Of a stretch of DNA of 64,000 nt, positions 45,634 to 52,560 are shown one piece after another. Source of the DNA: Blepharisma stoltei ATCC 30299 (taxonomy: Eukaryota; Protista; Ciliophora); NCBI GenBank assembly GCA_965603825.1, contig CBFDEM010000015.1, positions 310,001 through 374,000 on the forward strand. The letters run 5' to 3'. The notes below the pieces were generated by a model, which saw only the letters and a list, made by a program, of their open reading frames with translations, was not told the origin of the DNA and searched no databases. The translations under genes and the position numbers were made by a program. The number at the start of each line of letters is the position of its first letter. Position 1 is the first letter of the stretch.

Positions 45634-47958
45634 TTAAGATAATAGTTCAGGATATCTATATATAATCATCTTCATCAAGGTTTGGTTTTCTAAGAACTGG
45701 ATGTGGGCAGCTCTACCTATAAACGAGTCCAAAGATTTCTCGGCGATTTTGAAATTTATGTCAAGGCGGTAAAGAGTATCAACACTCATAAGAGAAAGGA
45801 GGTTGCTTGCCATTTCCATGTAGATTTCGCCTTTATCTGGGTCATTTGCAGCACGCTGAGAAACTTCCATTCTTGCTGAGTCATATGGGACATATTGGTC
45901 TTGGAAGCTACTGACTAATGCGACTTGTTTGAACCAGCCTAGACCCTTTTTGGTGGATAGCTCATACATGAAAGTTTGTCTCATGTTTCTGTTGTCGCCC
46001 ATAGTAAGCTGCTGTAGACACCTTGATTTCCTTCACTTTTTAAGAAGCCACATGCCAGCATCAATGATCCTTGATGAATTGTACATGTAGCCTAGGTGGG
46101 GACTTGAAAAAGACATATACAGGTGCATTCGTGATGAGTATTGCTCTAAGTATGGCAGTGCTGACCTAATTATAAGTCCTCCTAAAGAATGGCCTATAAA
46201 AGAAAGTCTGCCCAGAGATTTATTAGGACACCACTCAGATATAAAATTCATGACCTCCTGAGCTAGCCTAACTCCCATTTCTCCTATATCCCCTTCAGTT
46301 GAGTCTTCATTAGAATTGGAGCACAAAAATAAAGCTTCTGGGTGAACAGTGGCAATATTATTTTTCATTAATCGCATATCAAAATGGTTTCCTTGAAACC
46401 CATGGACTAATACAATTAAGTGTACTCCTCTATATAGCGTATTTTGCTTAAAAGAAATTTCGCTATCGAAGTTTTCAAAACTGTCGCCAGTACTTTGTGA
46501 TAATGGATGCATTGAATTAATGGCGCTATTAATTTCTCTTATACAGATATCTTCAAATAAGATTGGGTGGATTTCTGGGCTTGGAAGCATGCCTTCTTCT
46601 TCTATTGGCATAGGCTCTGGAGTTCGATAGACTCTATCTTGTCTACGCTGCTGAGCAACTATGTCATGTGTGACCCCTATATTTTCATCTGAGGATAAAT
46701 TAAAATCTTTAGTCTTTATAACATTTCTAATAATGCTTTCACTTCATCTTTCTTTAAATTTTTCGCTGAAATTTTCTTGAAGGAGAGTCGAAAGTGGTCT
46801 TGGAGCTAGTTTTACTAAATCAAGAAGTCTGTGCCATAGCTGAAGAAGTTGCCCTGCCATAAGATTGATATCAGTCAGCAGCATCCCTGCAATTTTTGTT
46901 GGATCATGTGATGCTACTCTTTCACTAAACCTTGAGCCTGATCCCTGCCTTTCTTCTTCAAGGCCTGAAATACTACTTAAAGAAATTTCTGGTCTGTCTT
47001 CTTTGTTTTCATCAATATAATCTAGCGCTGCGGATGACTCATTCATGGAGTCTATAAAGTTTTTACGATTCAGGGGATATGAGACTTGCACTTGACTGCC
47101 TGGAAGTGTTAAATGAGGTGGCAAGCAGATCGGTCCAAGTGACTCTTTTTCCCTTTGATTCAAGCATTTTCCTGTAAATAATAAAAAGCAGTTTCTTAAT
47201 TTTTCATAGGAATTCGCCATCATTTCAATATATTTGTGATAAATCTTGTCAGTTTCCTCAGCACCTACATAGGATTTTGGCTTTCCCTTGCTATCCTTAA
47301 ATAGATACTCTGCAAAACTAGTGTATCCAAGTTTTTGCTTTGAATTTTTCGGTGACGATATTTGTGGTAGCACGCGGTACCTAAAATCAAGCAAGGAAGT
47401 ATGCACCATAAGGTTGGCTATCGAAAAATAATTTTCACTGAACACAAGTGGATAGAATTCGTGCATTCCTGATGCTCCCGCGCTTAAGGTCAATTTCGAT
47501 TTTGCGACACTTTTGAATTCCAGCTGATGCTCCTCAACCATTTCATAAGCTTTCTCAGGAGTGACTTCTCCTCCAAGGTCGCTGAACATTAGTTCAACAT
47601 CAATAAAGATTTCTTTTTTCAAAATATTTAGTTCTTCGTCAATTTCAGTTCTAAAATAGCCAATGTCGTTCAGTTCGACTTCTTCTTCACAATATCTGAT
47701 CAAAAAGGCTCTGGTATAGTAGATTTTGGTAGACTCATCTTTACCAGCTGGCATTACATGGTGAGGGTCGTGCTTCTGTGTCCTTTTGCTCCTTACAACA
47801 TAAGTGCTAATCACATTATAAGGATGAGCTGGGGTAACGCTAGCTGGAGTTGCTGTATAGACTGAGAACTTGAGGAAATAAAGCCCTTGATGGAATAAAT
47901 CTATGTTCCGGAAACTTTCCACATGAATTGCCACTTCAACGATTCCTTTTAAAGACAT
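45634..47958 (-). CDS. FAM135: FAM135-like protein (DUF676 alpha/beta-hydrolase, putative lipase)
   Basis: FRNIDLFHQGLY N-terminus; HLIVLVHGFQG, SFIGHSLGGLIIR, SPHLG, QDQYVPYDSAR, IGRAAHI; three ORFs joined by TGA=W. Confidence 0.9.
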
Positions 47959-47972
47959 TTAAAATAATTAAA

Positions 47973-49565
47973 TTAGTTTTTGAGAGTATTAATTATATGC
48001 TGATCCATCACCTCTGAGAGATTGGAGTATTCTTTGAAGCCTGGGAATACGTTTAGATCCACAATAATATAATCATTTGTATGGGATTGGACCAGGATAT
48101 CATAGCCAAAAATAGTGATCTTAAGGGAATTTGTAATTATTTGAGCTCCCAATCTGACGATTTCCATACTTAGATCTCTGATTATTTGCTTGTCTTCTGA
48201 TTTAAGACTTTGTGGCCACGGCTGATCGCTTCTAAAAGAAACTACTCCTTGTCCCGAAACTAAATTACTGCAAGAAGGTCGAGAAAAGTATCGAATATCT
48301 TCTCCTAATGCATATACCTTGTAAACTGTTTTGTCATGATTAATATATTCTTGCAGAATTAATTTTTCTTGGAAATTTGTGAATGCTGTAATAAGGCCTT
48401 CAAAATCAAAAACCACGCACATGAAATGTGACAAATCTGAGACTGATGATTGGTCTGTTTTCACTAAAAGTGGGAAGTTTATGCTATGACTTTCCATTTC
48501 ATTTCTCACAAAAGGTATTGAATCGGGGCTCGGCTGTAAAATATCTATTTGCCAAGGAAGCCTTAGTCTCATTTCATTTATGAAAATACCAGAACCGATT
48601 GTTTCTTGTAGCTTTTTATACATATCTCCTCTTTTCAGTAAATATTCTATGCATTCTAAGCTATCTATGATTTTGATATCTGGGTGCTGATCTATAAAGA
48701 GCCTAAGGCTGCTTAAAGCATGTGCTTTCTAGCTAGATTTTACCTTCATCGACAAGAGATCAACAGCCTTGTGAACAATGACATCATAAGATCCAATTTG
48801 AGAAAAATCCGCATAAGGGTCAATAAAGTTATATCAAACTTTGTTGCTGCTTGCAAAACACCCTTTCATCCCAATGATTTCTCTTTTTTTCGCTGTTGGG
48901 ATAATATATCCAGCCTTTATTCCAAGAGGCTCATAAAATTCAATAGCGCTTTCCAGTAGACTTAAAGAAGATATTGTTCTTGGGTATTTGATTCTCCCAG
49001 AGTTAATAGCTTCAATGTTTCTTTCCTAAATAAGTTTTACCTGGTCTGAAGCCGAAATGTCTAATCAAATTGACTTGATTCCAGCATTAATTCCACAAGC
49101 AATATCCTTATCAAGCATATCACCAATTATATAAGTTTTATCAAGCACAGCAGATGCGTTTTCACCTAAAATAGATATAATCGTGTGAATAAAATTGGGA
49201 TCAGGCTTCTTTATACCAAGCTCCCCAGATATAAAAACTCTGTGAAAAATATCCCTTAGCTTTTGAGTTTCATCTCCTAATTCATCTATTATTTTGTTCG
49301 TTTTTGGAATATTAGAAGAATTTATTGCTAGAATCATGCAATATCCTTTATTCTTTAGCAATTTTAGCACTTTCATGGTATCTTTTCAAAGTCTGTAGCC
49401 TGATATATCGATTAAGGTTGATTCTTTTTTGTCTTCTTTCAGCGAATCAGAATCAGATTTTGCATAAGTAGAAGCATTTAATTGGTTTAATTTTTTTCTT
49501 GCTTCACAAGAGGGAGCTTTCACCAAGGTGTTCACTAAATCGAAAATAAGAATGCCATTCTCCAT
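47973..49565 (-). CDS. Fusion of N-terminal HAD-like hydrolase and C-terminal inositol-tetrakisphosphate 1-kinase (ITPK1-type ATP-grasp); 2 introns
   Basis: HAD: IFDLVNTL, ISGELGIKKPDP, IGDMLDKDIACGINAGI; ITPK: DVIVHK, HPDIKIID, FPLLVK, SHFM, LQEYINH...YKVY, RPS, FGYD, DLNVFPG; one frame after removing 49026-49040 and 48729-48743. Confidence 0.85.
48729..48743 (-). other. 15-nt spliceosomal intron
   Basis: gtaaaatctagctag; in-frame TAG within the ITPK N-terminal domain. Confidence 0.88.
49026..49040 (-). other. 15-nt spliceosomal intron
   Basis: CAG|gtaaaacttatttag|GAA; in-frame TAG at the end of the HAD core. Confidence 0.85.
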
Positions 49566-49983
49566 TTTAATTGTGAAACAAATACTTTATAGAATCAGTA
49601 TTTTTTAATAATGATTGATTATTACCCCTGAAACATATCAAATTTTTATTCCATAAGAGTCTCAAGCTCGTGTTTTATAAATTTTCTGTATTTTCTATTT
49701 TTAAAAGAGCCTAATTTTTATTATTTTTTATTGCTTTTATCTATTCGAAAGTAAATTAATAATAATAATAATACAAAAAAATATAGTAATTTTATTATTT
49801 AATAGTCTATCTTATAAATAAAAATGCCATTGGTTTAATGATCTTAGCAATTAAGAGCAACTACCACCGGCTTTTATATTAATAAATACAATCTAGAATA
49901 AATTCTGTGATAATAAATAAACTTTTTTTCGAGTTAGCGAGTGAATAAAATGCTACTGTGTTAATGTTTAAAATATTATTAAA

Positions 49984-52560
49984 TTACATGCTATTTGATC
50001 CTAATTCAAGCTTTTTTAGCTTGATCTGCAATTCATTAAAAATTTTTCCTGGATATTCATTTGGTTCTGATTTTTCAATAATGAGCTTGCATTTTAGGTA
50101 GAAATGTATGGCTTTATCTCTTATCTTCATATTAAAATAAGTATTTCCAATATTTCAGTATACAGCTAATAAATTCTTGCTATAAGGATCTAACAACTTT
50201 TCATAAATATTTATAGCATTTAAACAGTGAGATTCGGCAGAGCTTCAGTCCTTAAGATTATAATATAAAGCCCCTAAATTGAGACTTACGTCACCCATAT
50301 TAACTGTGTGGCCCATCCCACATCTTTGCAAAGTTTCCTGGCATTTTTGATAATAAGCCTTGGCTTCATCCACTTTGTGATTTTGATTCTTTAAATTTCC
50401 TATGTTCATAAAAAGTGTCGCAAGGTCTGGAAGATGATAAGGGTCTTTCCCTTGAAAAATTGTTAAAGCATCCATTAAATATTTTTCTGCTTCCTCAACC
50501 CTATTTAATTTTGAGCATAAGGTGCCATATTCCATATATGCCCTTGCTAACTCTACATGATAGGGAGGATAAATTCTTTTGGCTATATTTAAATTATTAA
50601 CTGAAAGATTTTCAGCTAAATTCATATGCCCAAGCCCTCTGTAGAAAACTGACATTATAAGATATAGAGTGCTTAAATCTTCTTCATCTTTTAAAATATT
50701 TTCTCTCAACTCTTTGCATTTCATAAACCTGTTATGAGCTTCATTATTATTTCCTAAATCAGCACACAGGCAAGCAACCTCGAAATTAAAATCAGCTTCA
50801 TCCTTCTTTTCTCCAGTTAAAAATTTGGAAGCATAAGAAATATTTTCTTCAGCTTTATGATAATTTCTTATTGTTCTGTAAAATCTGGCTCTAAAAAGAT
50901 AAAATTGAAATAATTTTTCATTTTGCCCAAGCTTCTCAAAAACCGGATAAGCTTTCGTTAGATATTCTTCAGATTCAGGGTATTCTTGTTTATCGTAGTA
51001 TGCACCTGCTAAAATTAAATAAGCATCTGCGAGCTTTCCCAAATTATTATATATTTTACAAATATCAGCTGATTGCTTTAGTAGAGCAATTCCTCTTCGA
51101 ATATCTCCTATATCCAATTCTGTGTTAGCAATATTTAGATAGACATCTCCAATAGCTGGATGCTTTTGTGGCAAATATTTTTCGTAGATATTTCTTGCTT
51201 TTCTAAAGGCTTTGTGCGCTTTTTTGTAATTTTTAACTTTTCTATAAGCAATTCCTATATTCATATAGATTCCAGCAAGACTCCCTTCATCAACAATTTT
51301 ATTTTTAAAAATTTGTTTTACCAGTTTGAGTAAAACCAAACCATCTGATATCTGGTTTTTCCTTAAATACATGGTGCTATAGCTAAAAAGAAAAATTGCA
51401 TAATCTTCACCATTACTATTTGCTGCCTCAAGCATTCTTTTAGCTATGCAAAAGTATGTCTCTGCTTTTTTAAAATTTGAGCTTATTAAATACAGCAGTG
51501 CAATGAGATTATAAGCTTTAAAAATATCTTTATGCTGAATATTTTTCCCAAATTTTAATCCCATTTTATAGAACTTCATTGCTTCTTCCCTTTTCCCTAC
51601 ATCTTTCAAGAGAATTCCAAGTCTTAAAAACAGCCAAAATTTCTGAGGATTTGATTTGTCTATCTTTTTAATAGCTCTTTTATAGCATTTTATTGCTTTT
51701 CTTTGGAGCGAAATCGCAGTATATAGTTGGGCAAGTTCAAAATATAATGCTGCTCTATCTTTTTCCTTAAAAAATGCTTTGGCTTTCCTAACTGCTTTTG
51801 CAAAATGTGTATAGTCTTTGGCTTTGAGAAATGGAAAAATTGATGAATATAGTTCCTGCCTAATAATATCAAGTTTATCATCAGTCTTTTCTAAATCATA
51901 AATATATTTGCATCTTGAAAAAGTCATTTCTGCCATTTCATATTCTCTATTGCATAGAAATTCAAATCCCATTCGATAAAAAGCATCGGATAAATTCTTT
52001 TCATTTTTGATGTTAGTATTGGTGATGCCAAATGTATAATGCTCGCTAAAACTAAAAAAATTAAAGTTTACTAATTTTTTTTTAATTGCATTCGTTTCAT
52101 CCAATAAGGTGCTATTTTCTAGATCTATTTTCAGAACTTTAATATATTTTGAAGTAACTTCAGGAGTTTGAATTAAATAAAAATCAGCAACACTTGGGCA
52201 TGGCTGTTTCTGAATTTTTTCAGTTTTCAAAATGTATAAATAGATACTATTTATCAATTGAATTGTTTCTGAAGAACTTTTAATTAGAATTTGCATTTCA
52301 CTTAGAGATCAAGAATTACTTTTTTGAGCAATAAAAGTTCTCTCTTTAGCAAGAAATGTTTGAATTTCTATTTTAAGAGAATCTAGCTTATTGAGTATTA
52401 AGGATTTTGATTCAATATTAATTTCATCAAAAAATTCTTCTTTCATATGGCTTCCGGCTTCACTCTCTATATGCTCATTATAGTGTTTTATGCAAAGATT
52501 TATATCCTTACATCTGCACTTGCAGGTCGCCTCAAATAAACATTTTTGGCGTATGCTCAT
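49984..52560 (-). CDS. Tetratricopeptide-repeat protein with N-terminal Cys/His cluster (858 aa)
   Basis: Many TPRs (YMNIGIAY, HPAIGDVYLNIA, FMNIGNL); extended at both ends via TGA=W; TAA 49984-86. Confidence 0.85.

What the first reader, a model, noticed from the sequence alone, without database searches (positions are those of the whole stretch)
47973..49565. Hidden HAD-hydrolase / inositol phosphate kinase (ITPK) fusion in a ciliate
Seen: two apparently unrelated track ORFs become one 520-aa protein after removing two 15-nt introns and reading three TGA as Trp. The N-terminal HAD-like domain keeps the motif I Asp (FDLVNT, second Asp replaced), motif III Lys (KKPDP) and motif IV (GDMLDKD). 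The C-terminal part has the usual ITPK1 ATP-grasp motifs. Known: animal ITPK1 has no such domain, while plant ITPK4 carries an N-terminal HAD-like domain. Inference: this is either an independent fusion or an ancient architecture, and may be a bifunctional inositol (pyro)phosphate kinase/phosphatase, conceptually like PPIP5K/Vip1 but built from different parts. Retention of the intron at 49026-49040 would give a stand-alone HAD protein, a possible switch.
Basis: partly seen in the sequence, partly recalled or inferred. Interest (0 to 1): 0.8.

Follow-up and report, generated by a model that had tools for sequence, protein, structure and literature searches.

The report
Ciliate HAD-hydrolase/inositol kinase fusion gene
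This is a real, transcribed and spliced ciliate gene that joins a HAD-type hydrolase domain to an inositol-phosphate kinase, an architecture described so far only for the enigmatic plant enzyme ITPK4, and here the hydrolase domain keeps most of its active-site residues.

Summary
On the minus strand, 49565-47973 is one 520-codon reading frame once two 15-nt GT..AG introns are removed and three TGA codons are read as Trp. Spliced RNA contigs from four runs lack both introns and tile the gene from about 49559 to 47973. No contig retains an intron.

The N-terminal part matches Pfam HAD families and the C-terminal part matches the ITPK ATP-grasp domain, both above the curated cut-offs. The fusion is not unique. 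Orthologues occur in Stentor, Fabrea and many environmental assemblies.

Across this family the HAD nucleophile Asp, the motif III Lys and the acidic motif IV are conserved. The general acid/base Asp (+2) is replaced in nearly every member.

A confident model of the Stentor orthologue, and a weaker one of a Paramecium ITPK, superpose on Arabidopsis ITPK4 over both domains. The kinase tree places ciliate and plant forms on the same side of one supported branch. A shared old architecture is therefore likelier than an independent fusion, but it is unproven.

Phosphatase activity is untested. The proposed intron-retention switch has no support. I rate this a new variant of a known kind, of moderate interest.

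The parts
47973..49565 (-). Whole coding region of the HAD-ITPK gene (520 codons after splicing, TGA=Trp)
   Evidence: One continuous frame. RNA contigs tile 49559-47973, and there is no coverage at 49604-50300.
49041..49565 (-). Exon 1: HAD-type hydrolase domain with a short cap insert
   Evidence: PF00702, PF13419 and PF13242 above cut-off on 49385-49068. HAD-IA type NCBIfam matches. 37-40% identical to the HAD part of orthologue L003.
49527..49544 (-). HAD motif I, FDLVNT: nucleophile Asp kept, Asp+2 replaced by Val
   Evidence: The family consensus is FDxGQTL. L003 has FDLVGT.
49386..49388 (-). In-frame TGA read as Trp (first)
   Evidence: Falls at the W of ELWPDT in the Stentor-type fusions. 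L003 has Arg at this position.
49314..49337 (-). HAD strand 2 / motif II region, MILAINSS
   Evidence: Aligns with LASN(S/T) of the family. Coordinates checked.
49197..49211 (-). HAD motif III, KKPDP (Lys)
   Evidence: This Lys is nearly invariant in the 29-sequence family alignment.
49104..49124 (-). HAD motif IV, GDMLDKD (acidic, Mg2+-binding type)
   Evidence: The G is invariant and both D are nearly invariant in the family.
49065..49067 (-). In-frame TGA read as Trp (second)
   Evidence: Falls at the nearly invariant W after motif IV. The paralog has a TGA at the same place, L002 2505-2503.
49026..49040 (-). Intron 1, 15 nt, GT..AG, ends in an in-frame TAG
   Evidence: Left out of RNA contigs in X1 and X2. 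The spliced junction appears as a loose end in X2, X3 and X4. With the intron removed, the W-to-N spacing equals that of Stentor.
48744..49025 (-). Exon 2: C-terminal helix of the HAD fold plus the ITPK pre-ATP-grasp subdomain (AGY..KK, DVIVHK)
   Evidence: Aligns with the family. No Pfam hit on the two short pieces, but the close relative P0002 matches PF17927 over the equivalent region.
48834..48836 (-). In-frame TGA read as Trp (third)
   Evidence: W in P0002 and in L003 at this position.
48729..48743 (-). Intron 2, 15 nt, GT..AG, ends in an in-frame TAG
   Evidence: Left out of RNA contigs in X1 and X2. A 15-nt intron sits at the same position in orthologue L003.
47976..48728 (-). Exon 3: ITPK ATP-grasp kinase domain (Pfam match 48566-47991)
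   Evidence: PF05770, 2.5e-22. Human ITPK1 structures at about 1e-22 and AtITPK4 at 8e-18. The family-invariant R, K, H, K, G, D, D/N positions are all present.
47973..47975 (-). TAA stop; the RNA contig ends here
   Evidence: X1 record 2 starts exactly at 47973.
49256..49354 (-). 99-nt in-frame stretch skipped in a minority RNA form; it would delete HAD strand 2 and motif II
   Evidence: 55-nt contigs in X1 and X3. 5-nt GCTAA microhomology, no GT..AG. Nature unresolved.

Best explanation
Shown: 49565-47973 (minus strand) is one expressed gene of a heterotrich ciliate, almost certainly Blepharisma stoltei. After removal of two 15-nt introns, and with UGA read as Trp, its mRNA encodes a 520-residue two-domain protein. 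The N-terminal domain is a HAD-IA-type hydrolase fold. It is followed directly by a complete ITPK-type ATP-grasp inositol phosphate kinase. The protein belongs to a conserved HAD-ITPK family: a second paralog in the same genome, plus Stentor, Fabrea and many environmental relatives. That family is the ciliate counterpart of plant ITPK4.

Inferred, kinase: the kinase half is an active inositol tris/tetrakisphosphate kinase/phosphotransferase, because all family-invariant catalytic positions are present.

Inferred, HAD half: it is under the same purifying selection as the kinase. It keeps the Asp nucleophile, the motif II Ser, the motif III Lys and the Mg2+-binding acidic motif IV, but lacks the Asp+2 general acid/base. 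My best guess (about 40%) is a working phosphoryl-binding site. It would form a phospho-aspartate from a substrate with a good leaving group (a phosphoanhydride such as a PP-InsP or a nucleotide) and turn over slowly or atypically, coupling hydrolysis or phosphotransfer to the kinase reaction. The alternative is a purely regulatory ligand-binding domain.
For: Gene model: continuous frame and intron coordinates. Spliced RNA contigs cover the gene: X1 record 2 spans 47973-49260 with both introns removed, X2 record 11 spans 49007-49538 with intron 1 removed, and X1 record 5 reaches 49559. There is no coverage at 49604-50300.

Domains: Pfam and NCBIfam; PDB sequence matches.

Family: the paralog L002 is an intronless 576-codon frame with one TGA at the conserved W. 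Stentor OMJ94830.1, Fabrea A0A7S3MQ00 and about 30 further cluster representatives carry HAD plus PF17927 plus PF05770. The window-type orthologue L003 has the same motif I and the same intron 2 position.

Constraint: HAD identity is about equal to kinase identity in every pair. Window vs L002 is 30% and 25%. Window vs L003/P0001 is 40% and 44%. L002 vs Stentor is 56% and 56%. Motifs III and IV are near-invariant.

Link to ITPK4: the Stentor model (pLDDT 92.6, pTM 0.87) aligns to 7PUP over both domains. Foldseek gives the top hit with 487 columns. VIA gives Z 27.2, 408 residues, model 1-567. The ESM Atlas model has the plant ITPK4 cluster as best structural neighbour, TM 0.65/0.75 over 437 residues. 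Profile comparison of the plant N-domain against the ciliate HAD gives probability 78%, E 1.8e-5, 126 collinear columns. In the kinase tree all HAD-bearing forms lie on one side of a branch with SH-aLRT 93.
Against: The window protein itself was never modelled or searched as a joined sequence; the structural evidence comes from orthologues. The RNA evidence is from assembled contigs. Contigs cannot show transcript ends, strand or rare isoforms, and the runs are only guessed to be RNA. The spliced-out introns and the empty intergenic stretch argue that they are RNA.

Asp+2 of motif I is Val here, and Gly, Glu or Lys in the other aligned relatives (none keeps Asp). AtITPK4, the only tested relative, showed no phosphatase or dehalogenase activity. 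The window copy has a much shorter cap (about 45 residues) than the Stentor type (about 115), which could mean loss of substrate specificity elements. One family member (P0008) has lost the nucleophile Asp. The superposition on 7PUP has rmsd 7.2 A, so the domain orientation is similar but not identical.
Confidence: 0.72

Rival explanations
1. The HAD domain is a catalytically dead pseudo-enzyme. It would serve as a structural, regulatory or ligand-sensing module for the kinase, as suspected for AtITPK4.
For: Asp+2 is missing in nearly the whole family. AtITPK4 showed no phosphatase or dehalogenase activity. Relatives show progressive decay: P0008 lacks the nucleophile, P0002 is capless, and the Paramecium N-domain has no detectable HAD motifs but a Rossmannoid model.
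Against: The nucleophile Asp, the Lys and both acidic residues of motif IV stay conserved at 25-30% overall identity, and the HAD half evolves no faster than the kinase. Active HAD enzymes without Asp+2 exist: L-2-haloacid dehalogenases and phosphonoacetaldehyde hydrolase. Both are among the structural neighbours of the model.
Confidence: 0.42
2. The ciliate fusion arose independently of plant ITPK4. This would be a convergent joining of a HAD-IA hydrolase to an ITPK.
For: The ciliate HAD is C1-capped with canonical motifs III/IV, whereas the plant domain is capless with DES and ASSRKEE. Sequence searches with the HAD part hit ordinary HAD-IA proteins, not 7PUP. The plant ITPK4 clade and the ciliate clade are separate. 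They meet the ITPK1-like group in an unrooted three-way star. ESM Atlas feature hits list bacterial HAD plus ATP-grasp clusters, so such fusions may be recurrent (lead only).
Against: Domain order and placement are the same, and whole-length structural matches to 7PUP are top-ranked. Cap loss happens inside the ciliate family itself (P0002; Paramecium type), so a capless plant form can derive from a capped one. On the three-way star one gain or one loss explains everything, whereas independence needs two gains. The profile-profile match is collinear.
Confidence: 0.35
3. Two products from one locus: retention of intron 1 (49040-49026), or internal initiation, yields a stand-alone HAD protein and/or a stand-alone kinase as a regulated switch.
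For: Both introns end in an in-frame TAG, so retention would truncate the protein. Contigs in X3 and X4 break around intron 2 (no contig at 48675-48750), which could reflect a branch in the assembly graph.
Against: No contig retains either intron in four runs, and all four show the spliced intron 1 junction. The paralog has no introns at all. The nearest orthologue L003 lacks intron 1. In-frame stops are a generic consequence of 15-nt introns ending in TAG.
Confidence: 0.05
4. Pseudogene or assembly artefact: two decayed ORFs that only look continuous.
For: Five in-frame stops under the standard code.
Against: All three TGA fall at positions that are W in relatives. Both TAG lie inside spliced-out introns. 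The gene is transcribed, and all family-invariant residues are intact.
Confidence: 0.02

Closest known systems
Plant ITPK4 (Arabidopsis AtITPK4, PDB 7PUP; rice/wheat ITPK6)
   Same: An N-terminal HAD-fold domain directly precedes a complete ITPK ATP-grasp kinase. Asp+2 of motif I is absent in both. Whole-length structural match of the Stentor orthologue and of a Paramecium ITPK model to 7PUP. Both lie on the same side of a 93% branch in the kinase tree.
   Different: The plant domain is capless (C0) and about 150 residues. Motifs II-IV are degenerate (DES; ASSRKEE), it matches no Pfam HAD model, and it has no detected hydrolase activity. The ciliate domain passes the Pfam HAD cut-offs, keeps Lys and the GDxLDxD motif, and carries a C1-type cap insert: about 45 residues here and about 115 in the paralog. 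The literature calls the plant domain plant-specific.
Animal/amoebal ITPK1 (human 2ODT/2QB5, Entamoeba 1Z2N)
   Same: The kinase half is a full ITPK. Human ITPK1 gives the best PDB sequence matches at about 1e-22, and the Stentor model scores Z 28-29 at rmsd 2.3-2.7 over about 280 residues. The catalytic Lys/His/Lys/Asp/Asp-Asn positions are kept.
   Different: ITPK1 has no N-terminal HAD domain.
HAD-IA hydrolases (NANP/HDHD4, PH1655, YjjG/PynA-type nucleotidases, L-2-haloacid dehalogenase, phosphonatase)
   Same: Rossmannoid core plus C1 cap, and motifs I (Asp), II, III and IV. These are the best NCBIfam and structural neighbours.
   Different: Typical phosphatases of this group have DxD in motif I. 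This family has DxG or DxV, like the non-phosphatase members (dehalogenase Tyr, phosphonatase Ala), yet it keeps the phosphatase-type Mg2+ motif IV. It is also fused to a kinase.
PPIP5K/Vip1
   Same: Conceptually an ATP-grasp inositol (pyro)phosphate kinase joined to a phosphatase-fold domain in one chain.
   Different: The domain order is reversed and the phosphatase is of the histidine-acid type, not HAD. There is no homology between the phosphatase parts. The resemblance is by analogy only.

Membership tests
ITPK (Ins134_P3_kin, PF05770/PF17927) | ATP-grasp domain matching the family model above the curated cut-off | tested here: met
   Exon 3 scores 79.9 bits against a cut-off of 23, covering profile positions 7-200 of 201.
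ITPK (Ins134_P3_kin, PF05770/PF17927) | Pre-ATP-grasp N-subdomain | tested here: inconclusive
   The two short pieces (63 and 30 aa, split by a TGA) give no Pfam hit. They do align with the family (GY..KK, D.I.HK), and phmmer links them to P0002 and P0004, which carry or adjoin PF17927.
ITPK (Ins134_P3_kin, PF05770/PF17927) | Nucleotide- and Mg2+-binding residues (Lys, His, Lys, Asp, Asp-x-Asn) | tested here: met
   LVKT, SH, YKVY, GYD and VDLN are present at the family-invariant columns.
ITPK (Ins134_P3_kin, PF05770/PF17927) | Inositol phosphate kinase activity | not testable with these tools
   Needs recombinant enzyme.
HAD superfamily, subfamily IA | Match to HAD family models above cut-off | tested here: met
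   PF00702 36.8 bits (cut-off 26.4), PF13419 33.4 (23.8), PF13242 32.3 (22), TIGR01549 26.7 (23.3).
HAD superfamily, subfamily IA | Motif I nucleophile Asp after strand 1 | tested here: met
   ILIFD at residues 5-9.
HAD superfamily, subfamily IA | Motif I second Asp (general acid/base at +2), required by HAD phosphatases | tested here: not met
   Val here, and Gly, Glu or Lys in the other aligned relatives; none keeps Asp.
HAD superfamily, subfamily IA | Motif II Ser/Thr, motif III Lys, motif IV acidic pair | tested here: met
   AINSS, KKPDP and GDMLDKD. K, D and D are nearly invariant and the motif IV G is invariant.
HAD superfamily, subfamily IA | C1 cap between motifs I and II | tested here: inconclusive
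   The insert is about 45 residues, against about 115 in the paralog and in Stentor, where it is modelled as a helical cap. The window's own cap was not modelled.
ITPK4-type HAD-ITPK architecture | HAD-fold domain N-terminal to, and contiguous with, the ITPK kinase in one polypeptide | tested here: met
   Continuous spliced frame plus RNA contigs bridging both halves.
ITPK4-type HAD-ITPK architecture | Same relative placement of the two domains as in 7PUP | tested here: inconclusive
   Met for the Stentor orthologue of the paralog (408-487 positions aligned, rmsd 7.2-8.5 A; Atlas TM 0.75) and for a low-confidence Paramecium model. Not tested on the window protein, because the joined model was not built.
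ITPK4-type HAD-ITPK architecture | Kinase domain in one clade with plant ITPK4 | tested here: inconclusive
   The split of ITPK1-like plus clade X against ciliate forms plus plant ITPK4 has SH-aLRT 93. The three groups form an unrooted star, and only quick trees were run.
PPIP5K/Vip1-type bifunctional enzymes | N-terminal ATP-grasp kinase plus C-terminal histidine-acid-phosphatase domain | tested here: not met
   Opposite domain order, and a HAD fold rather than a His_Phos_2 fold.

The most novel reading that the evidence does not exclude
The HAD-ITPK architecture is ancestral to a wide span of eukaryotes (at least ciliates and green plants). The heterotrich version preserves its original working state. 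In that state a Mg2+-dependent HAD site without a general acid accepts a phosphoryl group from a phosphoanhydride (a PP-InsP or a nucleotide) and acts with the adjoining reversible ITPK as a built-in kinase/phosphatase or phosphotransfer relay. Plant ITPK4 would then be a decayed remnant of a bifunctional enzyme.
Probability: 0.18. Interest if true: 0.8.

Novelty: new variant of a known kind. Interest (0 to 1): 0.55.

Why it matters
ITPK4 strongly affects InsP6, InsP7 and InsP8 levels in plants, yet the role of its N-terminal HAD-like domain is unknown. The only structural study found it degenerate, inactive in standard assays, insoluble on its own, and reported it as plant-only.

A ciliate family with the same architecture, but with a HAD domain that still passes family thresholds and keeps the nucleophile, Lys and Mg2+ motifs, gives a tractable system for asking what the domain does. 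It could be tested for catalysis, phosphoryl acceptance or ligand sensing. It also extends the architecture beyond plants, which changes how ITPK family evolution should be drawn.

Separately, this is a clean worked example of how UGA=Trp and in-frame 15-nt introns hide multi-domain genes from standard ORF tracks.

Tried and rejected
1. Pfam and NCBIfam on the short pieces (59, 63 and 30 aa) gave nothing useful. I relied on alignments instead.

2. I took the conserved 'linker helix' (L.QLP..L) shared with plant ITPK4 as possible evidence for a shared fusion event. I rejected this. A profile comparison with an unrelated tandem-HAD protein (P0216) shows it is the ordinary C-terminal helix of HAD-IA domains.

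3. The 1187-aa open frame with a His_Phos_2 match on contig 64 looked like a possible Vip1/PPIP5K. It is two adjacent genes, Spb1 plus a 454-aa histidine phosphatase.

4. PF06090 (IPK1) and PF18086 (PPIP5K N-domain) gave no six-frame match in the genome. The tool warns this does not show absence, so I draw no conclusion.

5. The organisms behind the EukProt entries GILJ01/GILK01 (P0010, P0055) could not be identified from the paper library.

7. The ESM Atlas listed bacterial HAD-IA plus ATP-grasp clusters. A word search with the HAD half did not reach them, so whether they are related or share the DxG motif is untested.

8. Paramecium-type N-extensions show no profile similarity to the HAD domain. 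Only a low-confidence structure model links them.

9. Every search used exon or inter-stop pieces by reference, and the structures are of database orthologues.
Full report
**Observation.** The minus strand from 49565 to 47973 reads in a single frame with five in-frame stops.
- Three are TGA, at 49388-49386, 49067-49065 and 48836-48834.
- Two are TAG that close 15-nt stretches beginning with GT, at 49040-49026 and 48743-48729.
- Removing the two stretches leaves 520 codons.
- The standard-code ORF list shows only fragments of 59, 103 and 216 residues, which is why the gene looks like unrelated ORFs.

**Which genome.** The window is contig 15, 310001-374000, of a 41,464,486-base, 64-contig assembly. 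The published somatic genome of Blepharisma stoltei ATCC 30299 is 41 Mbp in 64 telomere-to-telomere contigs. It uses UGA as Trp and has mostly 15-16 bp introns (PMC9942806). The species identification is my inference from these numbers.

**The code reassignment is visible in the gene itself.**
- The second TGA falls at a Trp that is nearly invariant in 29 relatives.
- The first falls at the W of ELWPDT in the Stentor-type relatives.
- The third falls at a W in the two closest relatives.

**Domains.** All searches used the pieces between stops, by reference.
- Piece 49385-49068 passes the curated cut-offs of PF00702, PF13419 and PF13242. Its best NCBIfam neighbours are HAD-IA types: CTE7/NANP-like, and PynA and YjjG nucleotidases.
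- Exon 3 matches PF05770 at 2.5e-22. It also matches human ITPK1 structures at about 1e-22 and AtITPK4 at 8e-18.
- Every position that is invariant in the family's kinase half (R, K, H, K, G, D, D-x-N) is present in the window gene.

**Transcription and splicing.** Four runs of one study hold 66-76% of the sampled words of the region.
- The contigs omit exactly 15 letters at 48729 and at 49025/26.
- X1 record 2 spans 47973-49260 with both introns gone.
- X2 record 11 spans 49007-49538 with intron 1 gone.
- X2, X3 and X4 contigs ending at 49027 carry the exon 1 sequence as a loose end, which is the spliced junction.
- X1 record 5 reaches 49559, six bases short of the ATG.
- There is no coverage at 49604-50300, and none bridging 47941-47972 to the next gene.

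The runs are labelled only 'RNA?'. Spliced-out introns and an empty intergenic stretch show that they are RNA. Molecules therefore run from the HAD part into the kinase part with a continuous frame.

Caveat: contigs cannot show transcript ends, strand, or rare isoforms.

**The fusion is not unique.**
- A second PF05770 match lies on contig 1. It is an intronless frame of 576 codons with one TGA at the same conserved Trp. It encodes a 232-residue HAD domain, then the kinase. It is only 30% (HAD) and 25% (kinase) identical to the window gene, so the duplication is old.
- An exhaustive HMMER search with exon 3 found 943 relatives. Local phmmer/hmmsearch plus Pfam scans identified HAD plus PF17927 plus PF05770 in Stentor coeruleus OMJ94830.1, Fabrea salina A0A7S3MQ00, two EukProt transcriptome proteins of unidentified organisms, and many environmental proteins. 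Word searches added about 20 more.
- The closest relative with genomic context (L003, a metagenome contig) is a window-type orthologue. It has motif I FDLVGT and a short cap. It has a 15-nt intron at the same position as intron 2, no intron 1 and no TGA.

**State of the HAD site across the family.**
- The family motif I is FDxGQTL. The nucleophile Asp is kept in most members.
- None of the aligned relatives keeps Asp at +2. It is Gly in most (Glu or Lys in a few) and Val in the window type.
- Motif II (LASN S/T), the motif III Lys and motif IV (GD..D) are invariant or nearly so.
- HAD identity tracks kinase identity in every comparison: 30% and 25%, 40% and 44%, 56% and 56%. The domain is therefore under comparable constraint.
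- The window type has a reduced cap of about 45 residues, against about 115. Its relative P0002 has essentially none.

**Relation to plant ITPK4.** Whitfield et al. 2023 describe the AtITPK4 N-domain as a capless HAD-like fold with DES in place of DxD and a degenerate motif IV. They found no phosphatase or dehalogenase activity, and report that searches found the domain only in plant ITPK4. I found no paper on a ciliate HAD-ITPK. Four lines bear on common origin.
1. Stentor model. An AlphaFold model of the Stentor orthologue is confident (pLDDT 92.6, pTM 0.87). Its top Foldseek hit is 7PUP over 487 columns. VIA aligns 408 residues, model 1-567, Z 27.2, rmsd 7.2 A. The ESM Atlas's own model has the plant ITPK4 cluster as best structural neighbour (TM 0.65/0.75, 437 residues).
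2. Paramecium model. A Paramecium ITPK with a 126-residue N-extension and no HAD motifs gives a low-confidence Rossmannoid N-domain. Its best whole-length match is again 7PUP (Z 28.7, 424 residues). Plant sequences were in its alignment, which may bias the model.
3. Profile comparison. The plant N-domain against the ciliate HAD gives probability 78%, E 1.8e-5, over 126 collinear columns.
4. Trees. In quick maximum-likelihood trees of the kinase domain, the HAD-bearing ciliate forms and the degenerate ciliate forms group together (SH-aLRT 86-87). Plant ITPK4 is a separate clade (100). The ITPK1-like sequences, together with an environmental clade, are split from both by a branch with SH-aLRT 93. 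This is an unrooted three-way star. One gain or one loss of the N-domain explains it, while independent fusion needs two gains. The root is unknown, and I ran no careful search or AU test.

**What it most likely does.**
- The kinase half should be an active ITPK.
- The HAD half keeps everything needed to bind Mg2+ and a phosphoryl group and to form a phospho-aspartate.
- It lacks the residue that HAD phosphatases use to protonate the leaving group and to activate water.
- Active HADs without that Asp are known, namely dehalogenases and phosphonatase, and they are among the structural neighbours.
- I therefore favour, at about 40%, an atypical catalytic or phosphoryl-accepting site acting on a substrate with a good leaving group.
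- About equally likely, at roughly 42%, is a non-catalytic regulatory domain.
No retained form appears in four runs, the paralog is intronless, and intron 1 is absent from the nearest orthologue.

**Limits.** The structural statements concern orthologues.

**Verdict.** This is a new variant of a known kind: an ITPK4-type HAD-ITPK outside plants, with a largely intact HAD active site. The proteins already sit unnamed or auto-named in public databases, and function remains untested, so I score interest at 0.55.

Noticed in passing
window 49256-49354: RNA contigs of runs X1 (depth 3.5) and X3 (depth 10.4, about equal to the unskipped path) join 49255 to 49355. This is an in-frame 99-nt deletion with 5-nt GCTAA microhomology and no GT..AG, and it would remove HAD strand 2 and motif II. 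It is absent from X2 and X4. It could be a template-switch artefact, a strain allele, a somatic DNA variant or a non-canonical splice.
   Followed up: partly
window 47941-47972: The stop of this gene lies 14 nt from the ATG (47958) of the next co-oriented gene (46744-47958). An earlier first-reader note called this an operon-like string. In all four runs no RNA contig bridges the gap, and contigs end at 47934/47940 and start at 47973 or later. This argues for separate transcripts, within the limits of contig data.
   Followed up: partly
window 46876-46948 and 48516-48571: Alternative contigs with clustered single-base differences appear in X2 and X4 (four at 46876-46948, both runs) and in X4 only (four at 48516-48571). 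This is consistent with a second allele or strain in those samples.
   Followed up: no
G000 whole genome (contigs 3, 9, 36 and others): Six-frame searches found at least 10 IPK-family (PF03770) matches, including close tandem pairs on contigs 3, 9 and 36. There was no match to IPK1/IPPK (PF06090) or to the PPIP5K N-domain (PF18086). If the absences are real, the organism may not make InsP6 or InsP8 by the usual route. The tool warns that no match does not show absence. Earlier scan notes read the tandem pairs as double-kinase genes with a CDGSH tail.
   Followed up: partly
L002 (G000 contig 1, 616720-620232), minus strand 3201-1471: A paralogous HAD-ITPK gene: intronless, 576 codons, with a single TGA at the conserved Trp. 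It has a full-size cap and motif I FDVGQT, and is 56% identical to the Stentor protein.
   Followed up: yes
L003 2098-3705 (ENA metagenome contig): A window-type orthologue called as two genes by the source, because a 15-nt intron with an in-frame TAG splits it. The same hidden fusion therefore recurs in public annotations.
   Followed up: yes
proteins P0020, P0048, P0052, P0056, P0060, P0100, P0103, P0110, P0116, P0136, P0137: An environmental clade of ITPKs carries N-terminal extensions of about 120-490 residues. These extensions have no Pfam match and no profile similarity to HAD. Organism and fold are unknown.
   Followed up: partly
ESM Atlas neighbours of P0165: Bacterial clusters of 465-560-residue proteins combine HAD-IA domains with ATP-grasp domains (ATPgrasp_Ter, ATP-grasp_3, PylC-like_N). 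They score 0.89-0.96 by language-model features. This is a possible recurrent HAD plus ATP-grasp pairing, and I did not verify it.
   Followed up: partly
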